This document shows positions 5,013 through 12,431 of a stretch of 64,000 nucleotides of DNA, in pieces. Source of the stretch: Oikopleura dioica (taxonomy: Eukaryota; Animalia; Chordata); the NCBI GenBank assembly GCA_907165135.1, contig OU015568.1:2790001-2854000 (forward strand), written 5' to 3'. Made by a program: the position numbers and the translations under genes. The notes beneath the pieces are model-generated. The model worked only from the letters and a program-made list of their open reading frames with translations. It had not been told where the DNA came from and made no database searches. The first letter of the stretch is position 1; each line of letters opens with the position of its first letter.

Positions 5013-5593
5013 CCGCGACAAAAATCAAATATCACAAGAAATATTATTTTTCTTACGCCTTGTTTATAAAGCAAGAACAATCATTTTCTTTTTTTATAAT
5101 TCATGTGTAAACCACTTTACCGATTTTAGATTCAGCACTTTAAAAGGACAGATTTTCAATACTGTCTGCTGCAAAAACCAAAAAATGGACAAGAAGCCCG
5201 TTTTTCTGTCCACAAAAGGAACTCGTTCAGATAAAAATGGAGAATTATGTCAGCTCACTCGAGTAAGAAAAACATCTAAGGAACAAAATTTGTTACCAAC
5301 CTAGAATAATAAATTCAGAAATCTACAAGTGCTCGGCTTATTTGAACACGTCGAAAATCCGCAAAACTCTAAATTGCGAAAAGCAACAGTAACTCGTCGA
5401 AAATAAAGGATGAATCTGTGGTTCATGAAATTTTAAGCTGCGTGACCACTTAAAAGTCCAATCTTCTGCCGCATAAAGTGAAAAACAGGCGCAGAAAAGG
5501 TAAATAATTAAAAACGGGATGGTTGTGGAAAAGTATAAAATAGAATTGGATGTTTTTAATTTACCAGAAAAGGAAAATATCAATCGAAGAAAA

Positions 5594-5856
5594 ATGAGAT
5601 TTTCGAGCATTCTATTTATCGGACTTGCATTCGCTAGTTCCTTTCGAGATGCTCTTTTGTAAGTCAAAATTGGGAAGGAGGCTTAGGGCTATAATTCAGG
5701 AGTAATGCGATCGACGACGCTGCCAACCACGATCTACTGAAACGCAGCTTTGGTTTCCAATCGTACCGAAGCAGATACGATCAACTGATGGACAAACTCG
5801 CCTCGGCCGCAAATGACGAGAATTTGCTCGAAATTCTGGGCGGACTGAATAATTGA
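5594..5856 (+). CDS. Small secreted peptide precursor (signal peptide plus KR site), 2 exons
   Basis: Exons 5594-5658 and 5700-5856 are joined by a 41-nt gtaagt..ttcag intron in correct phase: MRFSSILFIGLAFASSFRDALLSNAIDDAANHDLLKRSFGFQSYRSRYDQLMDKLASAANDENLLEILGGLNN*. TATAAAA lies near 5534 and AATAAA at 5879. Confidence 0.8.
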
Positions 5857-6648
5857 ATTTTCAATATTTTTTTTCTTCAATAAAAAGGTCTTCTACTTTC
5901 CAATTTTTTAGAAACTAATCGAGTTAAATTGTCGGTAGCTTCACGTGTGCTCGAAATTGCGTTAAATCTGAAATAACGGTCGCTCTAAAAATCATTCACG
6001 TAAATTGCCGATTTCACGCAGAAAGCGCGTTCTTTGCTTCTAAAGGCGGTAGATCTGAAACAACAATTTCTTCTTTCCATTGACGACTTCTTCGAAGATT
6101 CAGCGGAATTGGTATTTTATTGGAGGGTTTTTAAAACAATTAACGATTGAAAAGTCGCACAAAGAATCTCAAATTAGATATTTCAAACGTCTTCGATAAC
6201 GGAGAACATAGATAGATTTGAGGCAATAATTTTTACAATTAATTTAATTATATAAATGATGAGATATGTCGTTCGAAAAAGGGCTATTTTCGAAGAATCT
6301 GAAATAAGCTTTTTTATCTGACATTATGAAAAATAATTGGCGATGGAGGATGATTATATCATAATCTTCTTTCGCTCTTCAAAGGGGGCATCTAAGAATG
6401 ATTGCTGGAGTGTCTGGGCGGTATAATATTTGGTATTGATTACGCGTTTTAGATCGCTAATTAATTTATCCAGGGATCACGTTTGAAGTGGTCAAAGGAT
6501 TTACCTTCACGACTCAAAAGCCTCTTACATCTCTTTTTTAACTACCATAGCTATCATCTGACGGATATGAGAACTTATATTTCTGAAAATTCATTTGAAG
6601 ATATCAGTTTTTCTTTTGGTTTATTTAGGGATGCGTCAGGATTTAAAT

Positions 6649-9600
6649 TTATGCTTCTGTGATTTTATTGCGATCGGACCGTTTCCAAAGGTCATTATCA
6701 AGAAGATATTGCTGTGTTCTTTCTAGTAGATTGATGAATTTATCTTCTCCTTTGTGGTATTCGATGGCCTTGTGGATTATCCTACTCCACGTTTCTCTGA
6801 AAAAATTGTCAGATGTTTTAATTGATGATTAAACCTCTCTGTTATCTCACAGAAATAGAAACACGTCCAAATGAGAATCGAGATTGCTTCATGATCATCT
6901 TTAAATTTGAAGTCCGGGCTTTGGTGGAATTCTTTGAATTGCTCTTCATTCATATCGAGCCAGATTTCGCTCAACTCTTCAAGTGTCGATCCTTTCAAAA
7001 CGATTTATTACTGCAGACGCGGGAAAGAACTTACTTTTTCTGATCATATATGCTGGTTCTCCAGGGGCATTTTGCCAGTGAGCGTTTTCGTCAGCGTTGA
7101 AAATCAGTTTGCCAAAATAATCGGATCTTTGTCGGCGCCAAGGCATGTTCAATTCAAGCCTTTTTTGGTTCAAAAGCACGAAAATAATCTTTTTTGATAA
7201 AAATCAAATAGAAAGACATTTCAGAACCGTCATTAATGCCATTACATTTTGGCTTCGGCTTCGGCCTGCCAAAACCTCCGAAAGAGAAGGACGGCTTTTC
7301 AGTAGGAGGCTTGTAACCGGTTGAAACTTGGTAATTGTGCATGAGCGCCAGTTGACGAACATCATTGGGATCTGCTGGGGGCGGTGGACCTCGACCATTT
7401 TGAATGAGTGCGCAGTGGGTGGCGTTGTTTTCGAGGAATGTTTCGGTCTAAAAATAATAATCGAAAAACGAAAGAAGGATTTTACATGAATGGCAAGTTG
7501 ACGTTGTCCTTGAAGATTGAGGCCGTTTGCTCCAAACCATCTGAGCTGCTGGAAATTATGAAGCTTTTTCGAGTTCTTGGGTCGCAAAAGAGATTCGGTT
7601 GGGAAGTCATGTGATGTTTCGATATTGCCTTCCCACGTGAGTTTAAGCCTGTATTTGGACAGATCTTGCTGGTGGTTTTCTTGAAAGATATTTTTCTAGA
7701 GAGGCATTTTTCAGTTGCTTTTACCTTGTTTAAAATGAAAGCTTATTCTGTCGTTGTCAATAACATCCGTTATTTGATTCCAATCTTCCTTCAAATAATT
7801 TTCAAAATAATCCTTGAGCTCATCTGAATCTCTTGGCAACTTCTTTTTGAAGCCTGAATAAACCCATTTTCTCAGTCGTTCATCATTCCATAGTTTCTTT
7901 AAATTCTGACCGGGGCCAGAGATGATTTCGATTTTGTCTTTTGAGTCGGATTTGTTAATGATCTCGGCGTTCGTGATTTTGAACTCGGAGTTGTTGATGT
8001 AATAAGGGATGACGGAGGCGATTTTTTCACGGAAGCGTTCTTTTTCTGTATTTGGTTTAATATTTTTTTAAGAATATCAGAAACCATAAGTAGTAGTCAT
8101 CTTGGTTGAAACTGATTTTTTAATTTAGGGAGTTATTCGATTTTATCAAGAAATTACACTTAGGGTGTTCCTTATTATAATGACCATATGGTACTGATTA
8201 AAAAATGACAAACCGAGCCTGAAAAATGCAAAACTTGACCATTGCCAGCTCTTGCCATCTCCCTAAAGCACTTGGAATCAACGATGATAGGTCCAACGAA
8301 AATAGGGTTGATTCTCAAATTCCCATTCGCCTCTTGCGTTTTCCGCCTGACGAGCTCCTCCAAGTTCTGTTTCCCTTCATCTTCTCCATCTTTCCAGCCA
8401 AATTGCTGATCCCCAATAACGAAAAAGATTCTTTCTGCCTCATGTTCCGAGTTTTTATCATTCGTCTGCTCTTCCAGGGTGCGCTCTAGAATCTCTCTGA
8501 TAAAAGGTCGACCAATGTTCGCGTCCATTGTTTTAACAGTTGCGTCGATTTCTTCATAATCTTTGACGGGTTGAAACCATTCAGATCCATTTTGAAGCTT
8601 TGGGATGAGATTCTCAGGGGTCCAGTTGTTTGTTTGGCCGTAAGTGATGATTCTCATGAAAGTTCTGCCGTCGTTAAGATTTGGGTCATTAATCAGTAGT
8701 CTTTTAAAGAATTGAACAATCTTCTAGCAGTGCGAAGTTTTTTATAGAAGCTTTGTGTTGATTGCCGCTATCTTTCTTATGAAAATATTCCAGTAGGATT
8801 TGATTATAAAAAGACTTTTGGTCCTCAAAAAAAAAAGGAAAATTTGTTCGATCCGTTCCTTAGTCCACCAATAATATTTCTAATGACATCGCCATGCAAA
8901 GACCCCGACCGAGAAACAATCAGCGTTACGAATCTCTTTCTCTTCGTTGATTTTTCAACTTTCATCTTCTTCAATAATTCTTTCGCTTGAATGTTCATGC
9001 TTAGTATCTTCCCATCTTCTTCATTCGCGCTGAAGTTTTCCACCCAGGAATCAGGTCCGAATGATTTTTGTGTTATTCTTATCGCCAATCTTGCGTTGTA
9101 AGTGCTCGGCGCTTCGCGAAGTCCGACTTTTGGATAGTCTTCGAGGTGAAATTTGAATTCGAAGTTGAAGTTTTTGCCCTCCATCATCTCGATCACGCAG
9201 TTTTTCATAATACAGTTATTGACATACGCATTTGCTTTGATTTCTACATCTTCTTTGCAGCAGATTTTTATGTCGTTTCGCTCATTTATATCTTCCTTCG
9301 TTCCAAAGAGATAAAAAGGGTGCACAAGTTGAAATTCTCCATTGATCATTTGTAATTGTTCGACAGTTTCTAAATGAATGACAATTCTTTCTGTCCCTTC
9401 CTTCATCGGCCCCATGACAAAATTAAAATTGTCGTTGTAGCAATCCGTCACGCCCATTGCTTCATGAATTCCGTCAATCATTCCTTCATTCAGCGCGTCC
9501 AGATAAGGTCTTGCTTCGTGAGTGTCCATTCGGTCTCTGATGCAATCTTTGACAACATGGAAGACTTTTTCATCTTTTATATACTCGGCGCGAAAGGAGA

Positions 9601-9882: not shown

Positions 9883-10480
9883 GCCTTAGTTCAAGGCTCG
9901 TTATATTCGCCCCCTTCGCATTGTATATGCTTGTGGGAACGAAATTGGATTCGATCACCATTTTTTTCTCTAAAAAATGAGCTGAACCACAGCTTTTTTC
10001 ACGCGCGCAAGGGAAAGTTTTACGAGAGCGCGCAAATATTGACCCTGTTATGAGTAGCGAGACTGTTTTCCCTTTTTACGGACATAAAAAGAGCCCCTCG
10101 AGCTAATTTCGACTCATAATTTGGGAATGATTTTTGAGATAAAATGAAGAGCAACAACCACCGCTACACGAAGCATGCGATCACAATAAAATAGTACAAG
10201 AAGATTAGATTCCCCTGCCGATTGCCTCAAAAATGCAAAAATGAGGACTAAAAATTGTCATTATCATTTGTTTATTTACAGCTTTGTTTATGAACAAAGC
10301 ATAATTTTTATCTTTGTTCATTTAGTTCTGATGAAGTGTGCGCATAATTATGGCGCTATCTTGTTTCCTCAACTGAAAATTTCAAATAAATCTGCCGATA
10401 TTTCGTGCAATCTGCGGATAAGCATGCATTTATTCCTCAAGAAATCGAGGAAACTAGCCACTTTCTGATCAAAGAACAAA

Positions 10481-12431
10481 ATGACTCGAAAAAGAAACCG
10501 TTTATTATTTTTTCTTGGGATAGCAGTGTCGTTTGCAGCAATTGGGACAATTTTGAGTTCTCCCAAATTCTTTCAGAAAATTTTTTTTCAAGAGGATGAG
10601 TCTTCGGAAAAAGAAACTACAAATAGCCCGAGCTTCACAACAAACTCTTTTGAATCATCAAACACATCCATTTCGACGATCACACATGGTATTTGCAAGT
10701 TTTTTTAAAAAGACAGAGTGATTTTTAGCAAAAACACAAACAACAACGGAGCCTTCTATTTCTACAGATATATTTACCACAGCAAGAACACAGAAAATGA
10801 CGAGTAAGAGCACTTACTTGCGAAGAATATTTCTGCCATAATTCCAATATCTGTCCTAAAGATCGGGGTTCGAAATCGCCTAGGCGAATTCGCCTAAAAA
10901 GCTATGCTAAGCTAGGCTAGGCGAATTCGCCTAGCTGCCTAGCTAGACGAGGATTCTTGAAATTTCGCCTAGCCTAGCATAGCCTAGTCTCATACTGGAG
11001 GCTCCAGTCTGGAGCCTTAGGCGAAGCTAGGCGACAACGCGAAAATGAAAATTTGCCTTGAATTTCGCCTAGGCGAAGAAATAAGGCGAATTTAGGCGAA
11101 GTTTAGGCAGATCTAGGCGAGATCTAGGCAGATTTAGGCGAAATCTAGGCAGCTCCAGGCGAAAATTTGCCTAATTCTCGCTTCTCGCCTTATTTTTGCC
11201 TAATCTCCTAGAAAAATTAAAATGAATCGCGTTTTCGCTTTTTTCGCCTAGATTCGCCTAGCCTAGGTTAGCCAAGAGTCTGTGACAAAAAATTCTCCTA
11301 GCTTTTTGAAAATCCGCTCTGCCTAGCCTAGCGACTTTTTGGCCCGATTTCGAACCCTGCTCAAGATCAATTCCAATCGAAATCCGAAACACGTAAATGC
11401 CCGACTTCATACACTGGAGAAAATTGCGAATGCCCACCAATTTTTGTCTTTCAAAAAGATGAGTCTGGGAATCTCATCGAAGAAGATTACGTCTCTGCAC
11501 ATGAAATTTGCCGCAGCCAAGATGGATACATTGCCTTTTTCATAAATGAACAAGAATACAATAGCTCATAGTTAGAAAAATAATTTTAAAATTTTTGTGA
11601 GTCCGCGTGCGAAAAAAATGCATGCAAGGGTTTTTTTTTTCAAACTAAGCAACAGCTATCTTCAAGTCGAACAAGAAACTCGTCTTCAGTATCTTAAACA
11701 CTGGCCAGCACTAGCGAGGGAATACTTGGGTAGGCTCAAAACTTATGTTTTTTTTCCATTCAGAGTTGCAAATTTGCTGAGCTGAGCTGGCTGACTGCTC
11801 AACTCAGCTCAGTAATTTTGGAAAATGATCTGATCTGCTCAGCTCAGCTCAGACAATTCTCACTCAGCTCAGCTCAGCTCAATTTTTTTCGAACATGATC
11901 TGTTCTGCTTAGCTCAGCTCAGGTCAGACAACTATCATTTAGCTCAGCTCAGCTCGGCTCAATGATTTGAATACAATTATACTACCAAAAAACAGTAAAA
12001 AACAGCTCAGCTCAGCTAAGCTTTGATAAGGGACCGCTCAGCTCAGCTTAACTCAACTCTCTTAAACAAAAGGTCAGCTCAGCTCAGCTCCGCTCAATGA
12101 CCTCTGAAAAAGGCCAGCTCAGTAACCTCGGAAATAGGCCAGCTCAGCTTAGAGAAATTTTCACTAAGGTCAGCTTAGAAAAATTAATCAAAATTTGCAA
12201 CTCTGTTTTCAATCATATTCAGGATATCATTCGTGTGAGCTACCTACTTTTTACACAGATGACGGGAATGAAGCAACCTGGCTCAACTGGGCGCCAAACG
12301 AGCCAAATAACCTTGATGGACTGGAATATTGTGTCACCATGACAGAAGCGGATCTTTTCAACGACTACTTTTGTCATTTCAAAATTAGATTCGCCTGCCG
12401 ATTGCCTCAAAAATGCAAAAACGAGGACTAA
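10481..12431 (+). CDS. Type II membrane C-type lectin with Ser/Thr stalk and partial EGF
   Basis: N-terminal TM (RLLFFLGIAVSFAAIGTIL), Thr/Ser-rich stalk, CPTSYTGENCEC, AHEICRSQDGYIAF, then WLNWAPNEPNNLDGLEYCVTM..FNDYFC..FAC (CTLD with EPN motif). All exons join in frame through GT-AG introns at 10689, 10804, about 11570 and 11730. Confidence 0.85.
10864..11359. mobile_element. hAT-like MITE with cgcctaggcg arrays
   Basis: TIRs c(g/a)gggttcgaaatcg / cgatttcgaaccctg. 8-bp TSD ctaaagat (10856-10863) vs ctcaagat (11360-11367). The interior is filled with the palindromic motif cgcctaggcg and variants. Confidence 0.85.
11761..12205. mobile_element. hAT-like MITE with (gctca)n arrays, intronic
   Basis: Perfect TIR cagagttgcaaattt / aaatttgcaactctg. 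The flanks tttccatt / ttttcaat are an imperfect 8-bp TSD. The interior is mostly gctcagctca repeats. It lies in the lectin intron 11730-12222. Confidence 0.85.

What the first reader, a model, noticed from the sequence alone, without database searches (positions are those of the whole stretch)
10729..11470. MITE insertion appears to have intronised half of an EGF domain in an intact lectin gene
Removing the MITE (10864-11359) and one TSD gives a continuous EGF-like frame TCEEYFCHNSNICPQDQFQSKSETRKCPTSYTGENC. The gene instead stays in frame through a canonical intron from gtaag (10804) to the AG inside the right TSD (11365). That intron removes the MITE plus the codons for EGF cysteines 1-3. 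Cys4, the partner of Cys2, is now Arg (cgt, one step from tgt), while the Cys5-Cys6 pair remains. The now-intronic EGF piece is also 1 nt out of frame with the upstream exon, as expected for released sequence. This looks like a snapshot of TE-driven intron gain with domain trimming. An alternative GG donor at 10865 would excise the MITE in frame relative to the EGF codons.
Basis: partly seen in the sequence, partly recalled or inferred. Interest (0 to 1): 0.75.

Follow-up and report, generated by a model that had tools for sequence, protein, structure and literature searches.

The report
Transposon-bearing new intron trims lectin gene
In one Oikopleura dioica haplotype, a small transposon sits in former coding sequence of a lectin gene and a 2-base deletion 58 bases upstream created a strong splice donor, so the damage can probably be spliced out as a newly born intron; no RNA data could be checked.

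Summary
A 496-bp hAT-type MITE (10864-11359) has an 8-bp target duplication, CTAAAGAT/CTCAAGAT. It interrupts the EGF-derived module of a membrane C-type lectin gene in O. dioica OKI2018_I69 chr1.

Two marine-metagenome contigs about 95% identical (L037, L038) are natural MITE-free versions. They read straight through the predicted empty site and code Cys1-3 in frame with the stalk.

- **Cys4:** the Arg at the Cys4 position is also in the MITE-free relatives, and every close paralog lacks Cys4. It is therefore not a consequence of the insertion.
- **Frame shift:** the "1 nt out of frame" is a 2-bp deletion (GAGTGCAAG to GAGTAAG). That deletion itself creates the GTAAG donor at 10804. Of 542 possible small deletions, only this one gives such an in-phase donor.

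GT 10804 to AG 11365 keeps a 258-aa frame open. It replaces 21 residues, including Cys1-3, with one.

Against this: no transcript evidence, no annotated protein found for the gene, and a nearer AG (10860-61) would retain the MITE and hit a stop. The order of events (MITE or deletion first) is unresolved.

Verdict: a probable recent intron birth (about 0.5) versus a null allele (about 0.35). Unchecked scan notes (s1-322916, s1-534458) report similar MITE-in-exon cases elsewhere in this genome.

The parts
10481..10688 (+). Exon 1: start codon, signal-anchor (MTRKRNR + hydrophobic stretch) and start of the Ser/Thr-rich stalk; ends in phase 1
   Evidence: The ORF is listed. Its N-terminus is homologous to the paralog ORF L034:5440-6654.
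10689..10728 (+). Intron 1, 40 nt, GT..TTTTTAG; read-through hits a stop
   Evidence: The chr2 paralogs have no intron here, because their ORFs are continuous.
10729..10803 (+). Exon 2: 25 codons of Ser/Thr-rich stalk, ending ..TQKMT + first base of the split codon
   Evidence: Window 10776-10783 (ACCACAGC) is the empty site of a different MITE carried by the relatives.
10804..11365 (+). Putative new intron 2 (562 nt): former exon sequence plus MITE, from GTAAGA to CTCAAG
   Evidence: In phase with exons 2 and 3. Not verified by RNA.
10804..10809 (+). 5' splice site GTAAGA, created by loss of GC between 10805 and 10806 (relatives read GTGCAAGA)
   Evidence: Alignment A1. It is the only good in-phase GT in 10729-10870. 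Only 1 of 542 possible 1-4-nt deletions does this.
10816..10863 (+). Former codons for the N-half of the EGF-derived module (TCEEYFCHNSNICPKD; Cys1-3), now out of frame with exon 2
   Evidence: From 10806 to 10857 the sequence is identical to the MITE-free relatives.
10856..10863 (+). Left target-site duplication CTAAAGAT (one change from the original CTCAAGAT); holds a competing AG at 10860-61
10864..11359 (.). hAT-type MITE, 496 bp, 15-nt terminal inverted repeats, internal CTAGGCGAA-type repeats, no coding capacity
   Evidence: As RNA it folds into a long hairpin, z = -9.2. It is absent from L037 and L038.
11360..11367 (+). Right target-site duplication CTCAAGAT; its AG (11364-65) is the proposed 3' splice site
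11366..11570 (+). Exon 3: C-half of the EGF-derived module (..RKCPTSYTGENCEC) and first part of the C-type lectin domain
   Evidence: It is 96% identical to P0008.
11571..11649 (+). Intron 3, 79 nt, GTTAG..CTAAG; shared with the relatives and absent from the chr2 paralogs; flanked by CAATAGCT/CAACAGCT
   Evidence: It has no other copy in the genome.
11650..11729 (+). Exon 4 (..YLQVEQE..AREYLG)
   Evidence: The EYLG|YHSC junction matches the annotated paralogs P0001 and P0002.
11730..12222 (+). Intron 4 (an old position shared with paralogs), here swollen by a second MITE at 11761-12205 (TIR CAGAGTTGCAAATTT; TSD TTTCCATT/TTTTCAAT)
   Evidence: The second MITE is absent from L037.
12223..12431 (+). 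Exon 5: C-half of the lectin domain (EPNN, FND, four Cys) and the stop codon at 12429-31
   Evidence: Pfam Lectin_C scores 22.2 bits against a cut-off of 22.6. Frame check.

Best explanation
This haplotype of a type-II membrane C-type lectin gene differs from MITE-free relatives by two derived lesions 58 nt apart. One is a 496-bp hAT-type MITE inserted at CTCAAGAT, inside the coding sequence of a degenerate EGF-derived module. The other is a 2-bp deletion that turns GTGCAAG into the consensus donor GTAAG.

The most likely reading is that the two lesions now define one new spliceosomal intron (10804-11365). It is made of 60 nt of former exon plus the MITE and six bases of the right TSD. The acceptor is the AG in the right target-site duplication.

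Splicing restores the reading frame. It replaces 21 residues, including Cys1-3, by one Asn, and leaves the Cys5-Cys6 loop joined to an intact lectin domain.

Inferred, not shown: the MITE's terminal repeats pair in the pre-mRNA and bring the distal AG next to the left flank, so the effective intron is about 60 nt, a typical length for this species.

Shown: both lesions are derived, and the frame arithmetic works. Inferred: that the intron is actually spliced. Unresolved: which lesion came first.
For: - The MITE family has perfect 8-bp TSDs at other loci.
- Natural empty-site sequences L037 and L038 (protein P0008) read straight through, in frame with the stalk.
- The annotated chr2 paralogs P0001 and P0002 have no intron in this module.
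- The GC deletion creates the only strong in-phase GT in 10729-10870.
- Only 1 of 542 possible 1-4-nt deletions, and 1 of 959 substitutions or 1-nt insertions, would give an in-phase donor this good.
- The five-exon model is open for 258 codons.
- Against L037, exons 3-5 show 0 indels in 492 nt, while non-coding sequence shows 10 indels in 1053 nt. There are 9 synonymous and 9 non-synonymous codon changes, on 95 synonymous and 394 non-synonymous sites, giving dN/dS of about 0.28.
- The gene's own conserved intron 3 uses a similar ..CTAAG acceptor.
- The MITE RNA forms a hairpin with z = -9.2.
Against: - No RNA evidence was reachable.
- No annotated OKI2018_I69 protein holding this gene's N-terminus or last exon appeared in two word searches that did find the paralogs. 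None holding exon 3 appeared in the exhaustive search.
- A nearer AG at 10860-61 lies 58 nt from the donor, a typical intron length here. Using it would retain the MITE and meet a stop after 19 codons.
- The terminal-repeat stem would bury the pyrimidines in front of the distal AG.
- The trimmed ectodomain has 9 Cys, an odd number, against 12 in the full form.
- Divergence from the MITE-free relatives is only 3-5%, close to the 3.6% heterozygosity reported for this population (PMC8008620). The allele could therefore be too young to show decay.
- The donor score used came from a rough generic table of my own.
Confidence: 0.5

Rival explanations
1. Null allele or young pseudogene. The MITE insertion and the 2-bp frameshift simply broke one member of a multi-copy lectin family. 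The in-frame GT-AG path is a coincidence. Transcripts, if any, are unspliced here or use the nearer AG, and are degraded.
For: - No annotated protein for this gene was found, although the paralogs are annotated.
- The proximal AG at 10860-61 gives a 58-nt intron that leads to a stop.
- The same haplotype carries a second MITE close to the acceptor of intron 4.
- Paralogs exist that could cover the function.
- Low divergence from MITE-free relatives means intact exons prove little.
Against: - The only indel in the former exon is the one deletion out of 542 that makes an in-phase consensus donor.
- No stop or indel occurs in 777 nt of the remaining coding sequence.
- dN/dS against the relatives is about 0.28, and this haplotype carries no excess of derived changes at conserved positions.
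Confidence: 0.35
2. The N-half of the EGF-derived module is still coding. One route: exon 1 splices directly to the AG at 10809-10, then the MITE is removed from the GT at 10868 in its terminal repeat to AG 11365. This drops the 25-codon stalk exon and adds Arg-Asp. A second route is two-step removal that leaves a 6-nt micro-exon.
For: - Both paths are stop-free and in frame.
- GT at positions 5-6 of the terminal repeat is present in all family copies.
- The N-half is unchanged relative to the relatives.
Against: - The acceptor at 10809-10 sits in a purine-rich context with no pyrimidine tract.
- GTTCGA is a poor donor.
- A 6-nt exon is implausible.
- Zero changes in 52 nt is expected anyway at 3-4% divergence.
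Confidence: 0.07
3. The 2-bp deletion is an assembly or polishing error. The real allele keeps the stalk and EGF-like module in frame. The MITE is then removed through its own GT (10868) and the TSD AG, as an introner-like exact-plus-6-nt intron.
For: - The assembly is Nanopore-based and haplotype-merged (PMC8008620).
- With the two bases restored, the GT 10868 to AG 11365 intron is in phase.
Against: - The site is not a homopolymer.
- The assembly was polished with about 100x Illumina reads.
- An error would have to hit by chance the one place that makes GTAAG.
Confidence: 0.05

Closest known systems
Intron gain by transposon insertion (introners; DNA-transposon model of Huff, Zilberman & Roy 2016; cases listed for Oikopleura in Table 1 of PMC3443670, citing Denoeud et al. 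2010)
   Same: A non-autonomous DNA transposon with a TSD sits in former coding sequence. A splice site (the AG) comes from the target-site duplication. The terminal repeat carries a GT. The pre-insertion state is known from empty alleles.
   Different: The proposed donor is not supplied by the element or its TSD. It comes from a separate 2-bp deletion 58 nt upstream, so removal is imprecise and costs 20 residues. The family is small (13 candidate hits in the genome). I did not show that it creates introns elsewhere.
Intronization of exonic sequence (Irimia et al. 2008; reviewed in PMC3443670)
   Same: Sixty nucleotides of former exon become intron because a mutation forges a strong donor. In the relatives, the equivalent GT..AG segment is 60 nt, a multiple of 3. 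That is the kind of latent in-frame segment the model needs.
   Different: The donor-making mutation is a frameshifting deletion, not a point change. The new intron also carries a transposon at its 3' end.
MITE-derived non-canonical introns of Fritillaria borealis (Henriet et al. 2019, as cited in PMC13326754 and PMC7789003)
   Same: Both concern a larvacean tunicate and hairpin-forming MITEs inside genes that the U2 spliceosome must remove.
   Different: The intron proposed here is canonical GT-AG. I could not read the 2019 paper itself, so this comparison rests on citations and my own recollection.
EGF-CTLD membrane lectins of O. dioica (chr2 g4572/g4573; chr1 genes at 2.905 Mb)
   Same: Same architecture: signal anchor, Ser/Thr stalk, EGF-type module, and a C-type lectin domain with an EPN motif.
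   Different: This gene has one EGF-CTLD unit, three extra introns, and, on this haplotype, a module cut to its Cys5-Cys6 half.

Membership tests
hAT-type MITE | 8-bp target-site duplication | tested here: met
   The window shows a 7/8 match. Copies L002 and L003, L004, L010 and L012 show 8/8.
hAT-type MITE | Terminal inverted repeats starting CAG.., small size, no ORF, several dispersed copies | tested here: met
   The TIR is 15 nt. Typical full-length copies are about 500 bp (this one 496 bp), with shorter and longer variants of 135 and 1204 bp. The own-genome search gave 13 candidate hits. No ORF of 30 aa or more starts in the sense strand of the element.
hAT-type MITE | Matching autonomous element with a hAT transposase | not tested
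   A 1204-bp relative (L010) was seen but not examined.
Spliceosomal intron (new) | GT..AG ends, phase-compatible, read-through closed by stops | tested here: met
Spliceosomal intron (new) | Absent from orthologous or allelic sequences and from paralogs | tested here: met
   L037, L038 and P0008 are continuous across the site. So are the annotated paralogs P0001 and P0002.
Spliceosomal intron (new) | Junction seen in RNA | not testable with these tools
   No transcript data are available. The own-genome annotation is withheld from the look-up of encoding contigs.
EGF domain | Six cysteines, including C4-x-C5 | tested here: not met
   The Cys4 position is Arg here and in P0008. It is Pro or Ser in P0001 and P0002. 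Pfam gives no EGF hit on P0008.
EGF domain | Homology to bona fide EGF modules | tested here: met
   The module aligns column by column with the last EGF of P0004, P0014 and P0022; the chr1 L035 genes carry the same CxC..SYSGE.C.CPP motif by eye. The L035 protein scores on Pfam EGF.
C-type lectin domain | Pfam Lectin_C match above the gathering score | tested here: inconclusive
   The last exon alone scores 22.2 bits against a cut-off of 22.6. The paralogs score 44.8 and 57.5 bits. The joined model was not scanned.

The most novel reading that the evidence does not exclude
A self-rescuing frameshift gives birth to an intron in a chordate, caught with its 'before' allele. A 2-bp deletion breaks the frame and in the same stroke makes the donor that splices the damage out. 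A hairpin-forming MITE on the acceptor is tolerated because its stem keeps the effective intron short. The result is a heritable trimming of a protein module.
Probability: 0.4. Interest if true: 0.7.

Novelty: new member of a known kind. Interest (0 to 1): 0.5.

Why it matters
How new introns arise is mostly inferred from old events whose traces have faded. At this locus both states exist in nature at about 95% identity. One is an uninterrupted exon. The other is an allele with a transposon plus a donor-making deletion.

A single RT-PCR or RNA-seq look-up would show whether intron birth by combined transposon insertion and intronization has happened here. It would also show whether a protein module can be shortened this way.

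If the intron is not spliced, the locus is an ordinary null allele in a transposon-rich lectin family.

Tried and rejected
- **Annotated protein:** Two word searches, seeded with paralog sequence that shares long identical words with this gene, found only the chr2 paralogs. A third, on a neighbouring gene, gave only a metagenome fragment. The look-up of encoding contigs leaves the own genome out, so the gene list at the locus could not be read.
- **More alleles:** Two exact-pattern scans of JGI metagenome contigs found nothing. P0008's 90% cluster has one member.
- **Tandem paralog in the window:** Rejected. Only an 81-nt relic of the 3' end lies upstream.
- **MITE age as a clock:** Rejected. 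Divergence between MITE copies (74-83% identity) could have built up before this copy transposed here, so it does not date the insertion.
- **Empirical donor table:** I tried to build one from ORF-bridging short GT-AG candidates in the window. The set was too noisy to use. GTAAG was about 3-fold enriched there, and nothing more should be read into it.
- **Intron 3 as a repeat family:** No other copy was found in the genome.
- **My recollection of Henriet 2019:** I had recalled that it described MITE-derived introns in O. dioica. The citations show it concerns Fritillaria borealis. Denoeud 2010 could not be read.
- **Joined model:** The joined five-exon protein was not sent to any search, family scan or fold. 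Only single exons and natural ORFs were used, by reference. Joined translations were computed only inside scripts, to check frames.

Full report
**Where this is.** The window is G000:C1:2,790,001-2,854,000 of a 64.3-Mb, 19-contig assembly. A paralog search returned proteins named Oidioi.mRNA.OKI2018_I69.chr2.g4572 and g4573. The genome is therefore Oikopleura dioica OKI2018_I69, a Nanopore assembly polished with Illumina reads and haplotype-merged. The sequenced animal had about 3.6% heterozygosity (PMC8008620).

**The element.** An own-genome search with 10855-11372 found about a dozen related copies at 70-83% identity. Lining up their ends gives termini CAGGGTTCGAAATCG...CGATTTCGAACCCTG. Five other copies show perfect 8-bp target duplications. 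That is the signature of a hAT-type MITE.

- The flanking duplication is CTAAAGAT (10856-63) and CTCAAGAT (11360-67).
- Base 2 of the left terminal repeat is G, where all other copies have A.

**The gene.** Frames and splice arithmetic give five exons: 10481-10688, 10729-10803, 11366-11570, 11650-11729 and 12223-12431.
- The product would be 258 aa: a signal anchor, a Ser/Thr-rich stalk, the C-half of an EGF-type module and a C-type lectin domain.
- The last exon scores 22.2 bits on Pfam Lectin_C, against a cut-off of 22.6. The paralogs score 44.8 and 57.5 bits.
- Paralogs lie on chr2 at 2.604-2.609 Mb and on chr1 at 2.905 Mb.
- In all of them the stalk, the EGF-type module and the first half of the lectin domain are one uninterrupted reading frame. 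The annotated proteins P0001 and P0002 contain the whole module.

**The pre-insertion state exists in nature.** The exhaustive protein search with exon 3 (by reference) returned P0008, 90 aa and 96% identical. It is carried by two marine-metagenome contigs: L037 (1868 bp, Tara Oceans) and L038.
- These contigs align to the window at about 95%. They skip 10864-11359 and also the second MITE at 11761-12205, with one copy of each target site.
- Across the first site they read TGTCCT-CTCAAGAT-CAAG. They code ...TCEEYFCHNSNICPQDQVQ..RKCPTSYTGENCEC.., in frame with the upstream stalk codons.
The original target was CTCAAGAT, and the left copy has since changed.

**What changes in the interpretation.**
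- **Cys4.** The Arg at the Cys4 position is also in the MITE-free relatives. The chr2 paralogs have Pro-Lys-Cys and Ser-Glu-Cys there. P0010, a homolog of unknown source, also lacks Cys4 (Val at that position..PVKEC). Only the chr1 2.905-Mb genes and P0004, P0014 and P0022 keep Cys-x-Cys. Loss of Cys4 is therefore old and family-wide. The module is a degenerate, 5-Cys derivative of a true EGF, and Pfam gives no EGF hit on P0008.
- **The frame offset.** The offset between exon 2 and the Cys1-3 codons is a 2-bp deletion. The relatives read GAGTGCAAGAGC where the window reads GAGTAAGAGC. In the relatives the stalk frame runs straight into the module. The deletion therefore breaks the frame and creates the GTAAG at 10804 in the same stroke.

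**Is that chance?** There are only three GT dinucleotides in 10729-10870.
- 10804 (GTAAGA) is the only good one. It is in the phase required by the AG at 11364-65.
- I rebuilt the ancestral-like stretch inside a script and tried every 1-4-nt deletion. Only the observed one, of 542, gives an in-phase donor as good. The same holds for 1 of 959 substitutions or 1-nt insertions.
- The score table is a generic one of my own. GTAAG versus GTGCA is nevertheless a clear difference against the U1-complementary consensus GURAGU, which is established knowledge.
- This is the main argument that the donor has been used.

**Constraint.** Against L037, exons 3-5 carry 21 substitutions and no indel in 492 nt. 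Introns, the former exon piece and downstream sequence carry 10 indels in 1053 nt.
- By codon there are 9 synonymous and 9 non-synonymous changes, on 95 synonymous and 394 non-synonymous sites. That gives dN/dS of about 0.28.
- At the two changed positions that are conserved in paralogs (Glu in YHSCE and in GNEATW), the window keeps the paralog state.
- So there is no sign of decay. At 3-5% divergence, however, the power of this test is low.

**Against a working intron.**
- I could reach no RNA data.
- Two word searches that recovered the annotated paralogs did not return a protein with this gene's N-terminus or last exon. The exhaustive search found no protein with exon 3 other than P0008. 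The gene is probably not in the published annotation, which is itself incomplete.
- The left target duplication still holds an AG (10860-61), 58 nt from the donor. The species' median intron length is 49 nt (PMC8008620). Using that AG would leave the MITE in the mRNA and give a stop after 19 codons.
- The trimmed ectodomain has 9 Cys, against 12 in the full form.

**Mechanism and order of events (inference).** The 562-nt segment folds so that the MITE forms one long hairpin (z = -9.2). The stem base joins 10861-78 to 11345-62. This puts the distal AG three bases beyond the stem, next to the left flank. That could make the intron behave like a roughly 60-nt one.

Two histories fit equally well.
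1. **MITE first.** The element lands in the exon. It is perhaps weakly removed through the GT at positions 5-6 of its terminal repeat and the TSD AG, which is in frame and adds 6 nt. The deletion then supplies a strong donor.
2. **Deletion first.** The deletion turns a latent 60-nt in-frame GT..AG segment into an obligatory 58-nt intron, which is pure intronization. The MITE then lands on that intron's acceptor and duplicates it.

Only alleles carrying one lesion without the other can decide between these.

**Comparison with what is known.**
- Transposon insertion as a source of introns, including cases in Oikopleura, and intronization of exon sequence are both described mechanisms (PMC3443670).
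- O. dioica is known for many lineage-specific introns and a permissive spliceosome (PMC4122922).
- MITE-derived introns are reported for Fritillaria (cited in PMC13326754).
- This locus is a new, well-documented candidate example that combines two known routes, not a new kind of thing.
- Two unchecked scan notes (s1-322916, s1-534458) report other MITE-in-exon putative introns in this genome.

**Limits.** The joined five-exon model was not searched, scanned or folded. Only exons and natural ORFs were used, by reference. Joined frames were checked only inside scripts.

**Verdict.** A probable recent intron birth has probability about 0.5, and a null allele about 0.35.

Noticed in passing
window 11761-12205: A second hAT-type MITE (TIR CAGAGTTGCAAATTT; TSD TTTCCATT/TTTTCAAT; GCTCA-type internal repeats) sits in the old intron 4, 17 nt before its acceptor, and cuts the T-run off from the AG. 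The family is abundant (305 first-look candidates in the genome). It is absent from the relative L037, whose intron 4 is only about 40 nt.
   Followed up: partly
window 11558-11660 (intron 3, 11571-11649): Intron 3 is shared with the metagenome relatives but absent from the chr2 paralogs. It is flanked by CAATAGCT/CAACAGCT (7/8 match), has CATAGTTAG..CAAACTAAG ends, and leaves an NSSY-NSY duplication in the protein. It looks like an older intron born from an insertion with an 8-bp target duplication. No other copy exists in the genome.
   Followed up: partly
L037:1-266 and L038:1-147; target = window 10776-10783: The MITE-free relatives carry a different but related MITE (right end ..CAGATTTAGAACCCTG, GTCGAAAA/TCGACTCG internal repeats; at least 35 copies in G000). 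It sits in the stalk-coding exon at ACCTCAGC, a site that is empty in the window. The same gene was therefore hit independently in both lineages.
   Followed up: partly
window 10201-10281: An 81-nt copy (96% identical) of this gene's last 15 codons, stop and start of the 3' UTR lies 200 nt upstream of its start codon. It looks like the relic of a deleted tandem duplicate. No other lectin exon was found upstream.
   Followed up: partly
L034 (G000:C5:2600001-2610000): A cluster of three paralogous double EGF-CTLD lectin genes. The annotated g4573 protein (P0001) starts at an internal Met, although a 404-aa ORF with signal anchor and stalk is open upstream (5440-6654, minus strand). The third gene's second module has lost Cys5, and that gene was not returned as an annotated protein.
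   Followed up: no
L010 (G000:C1:12078971-12080174 approx.): A 1204-bp member of the first MITE family with the same termini and a perfect TSD (CTTTCAGC). It may be a longer progenitor or a composite copy.
   Followed up: no
window 10858 and 10865: Both post-insertion changes at the left junction fall within 8 nt (TSD C to A, TIR A to G), while the 52 nt before them are unchanged relative to the relatives. The TSD change removes a pyrimidine at position -4 of the competing proximal AG. This could be chance.
   Followed up: no
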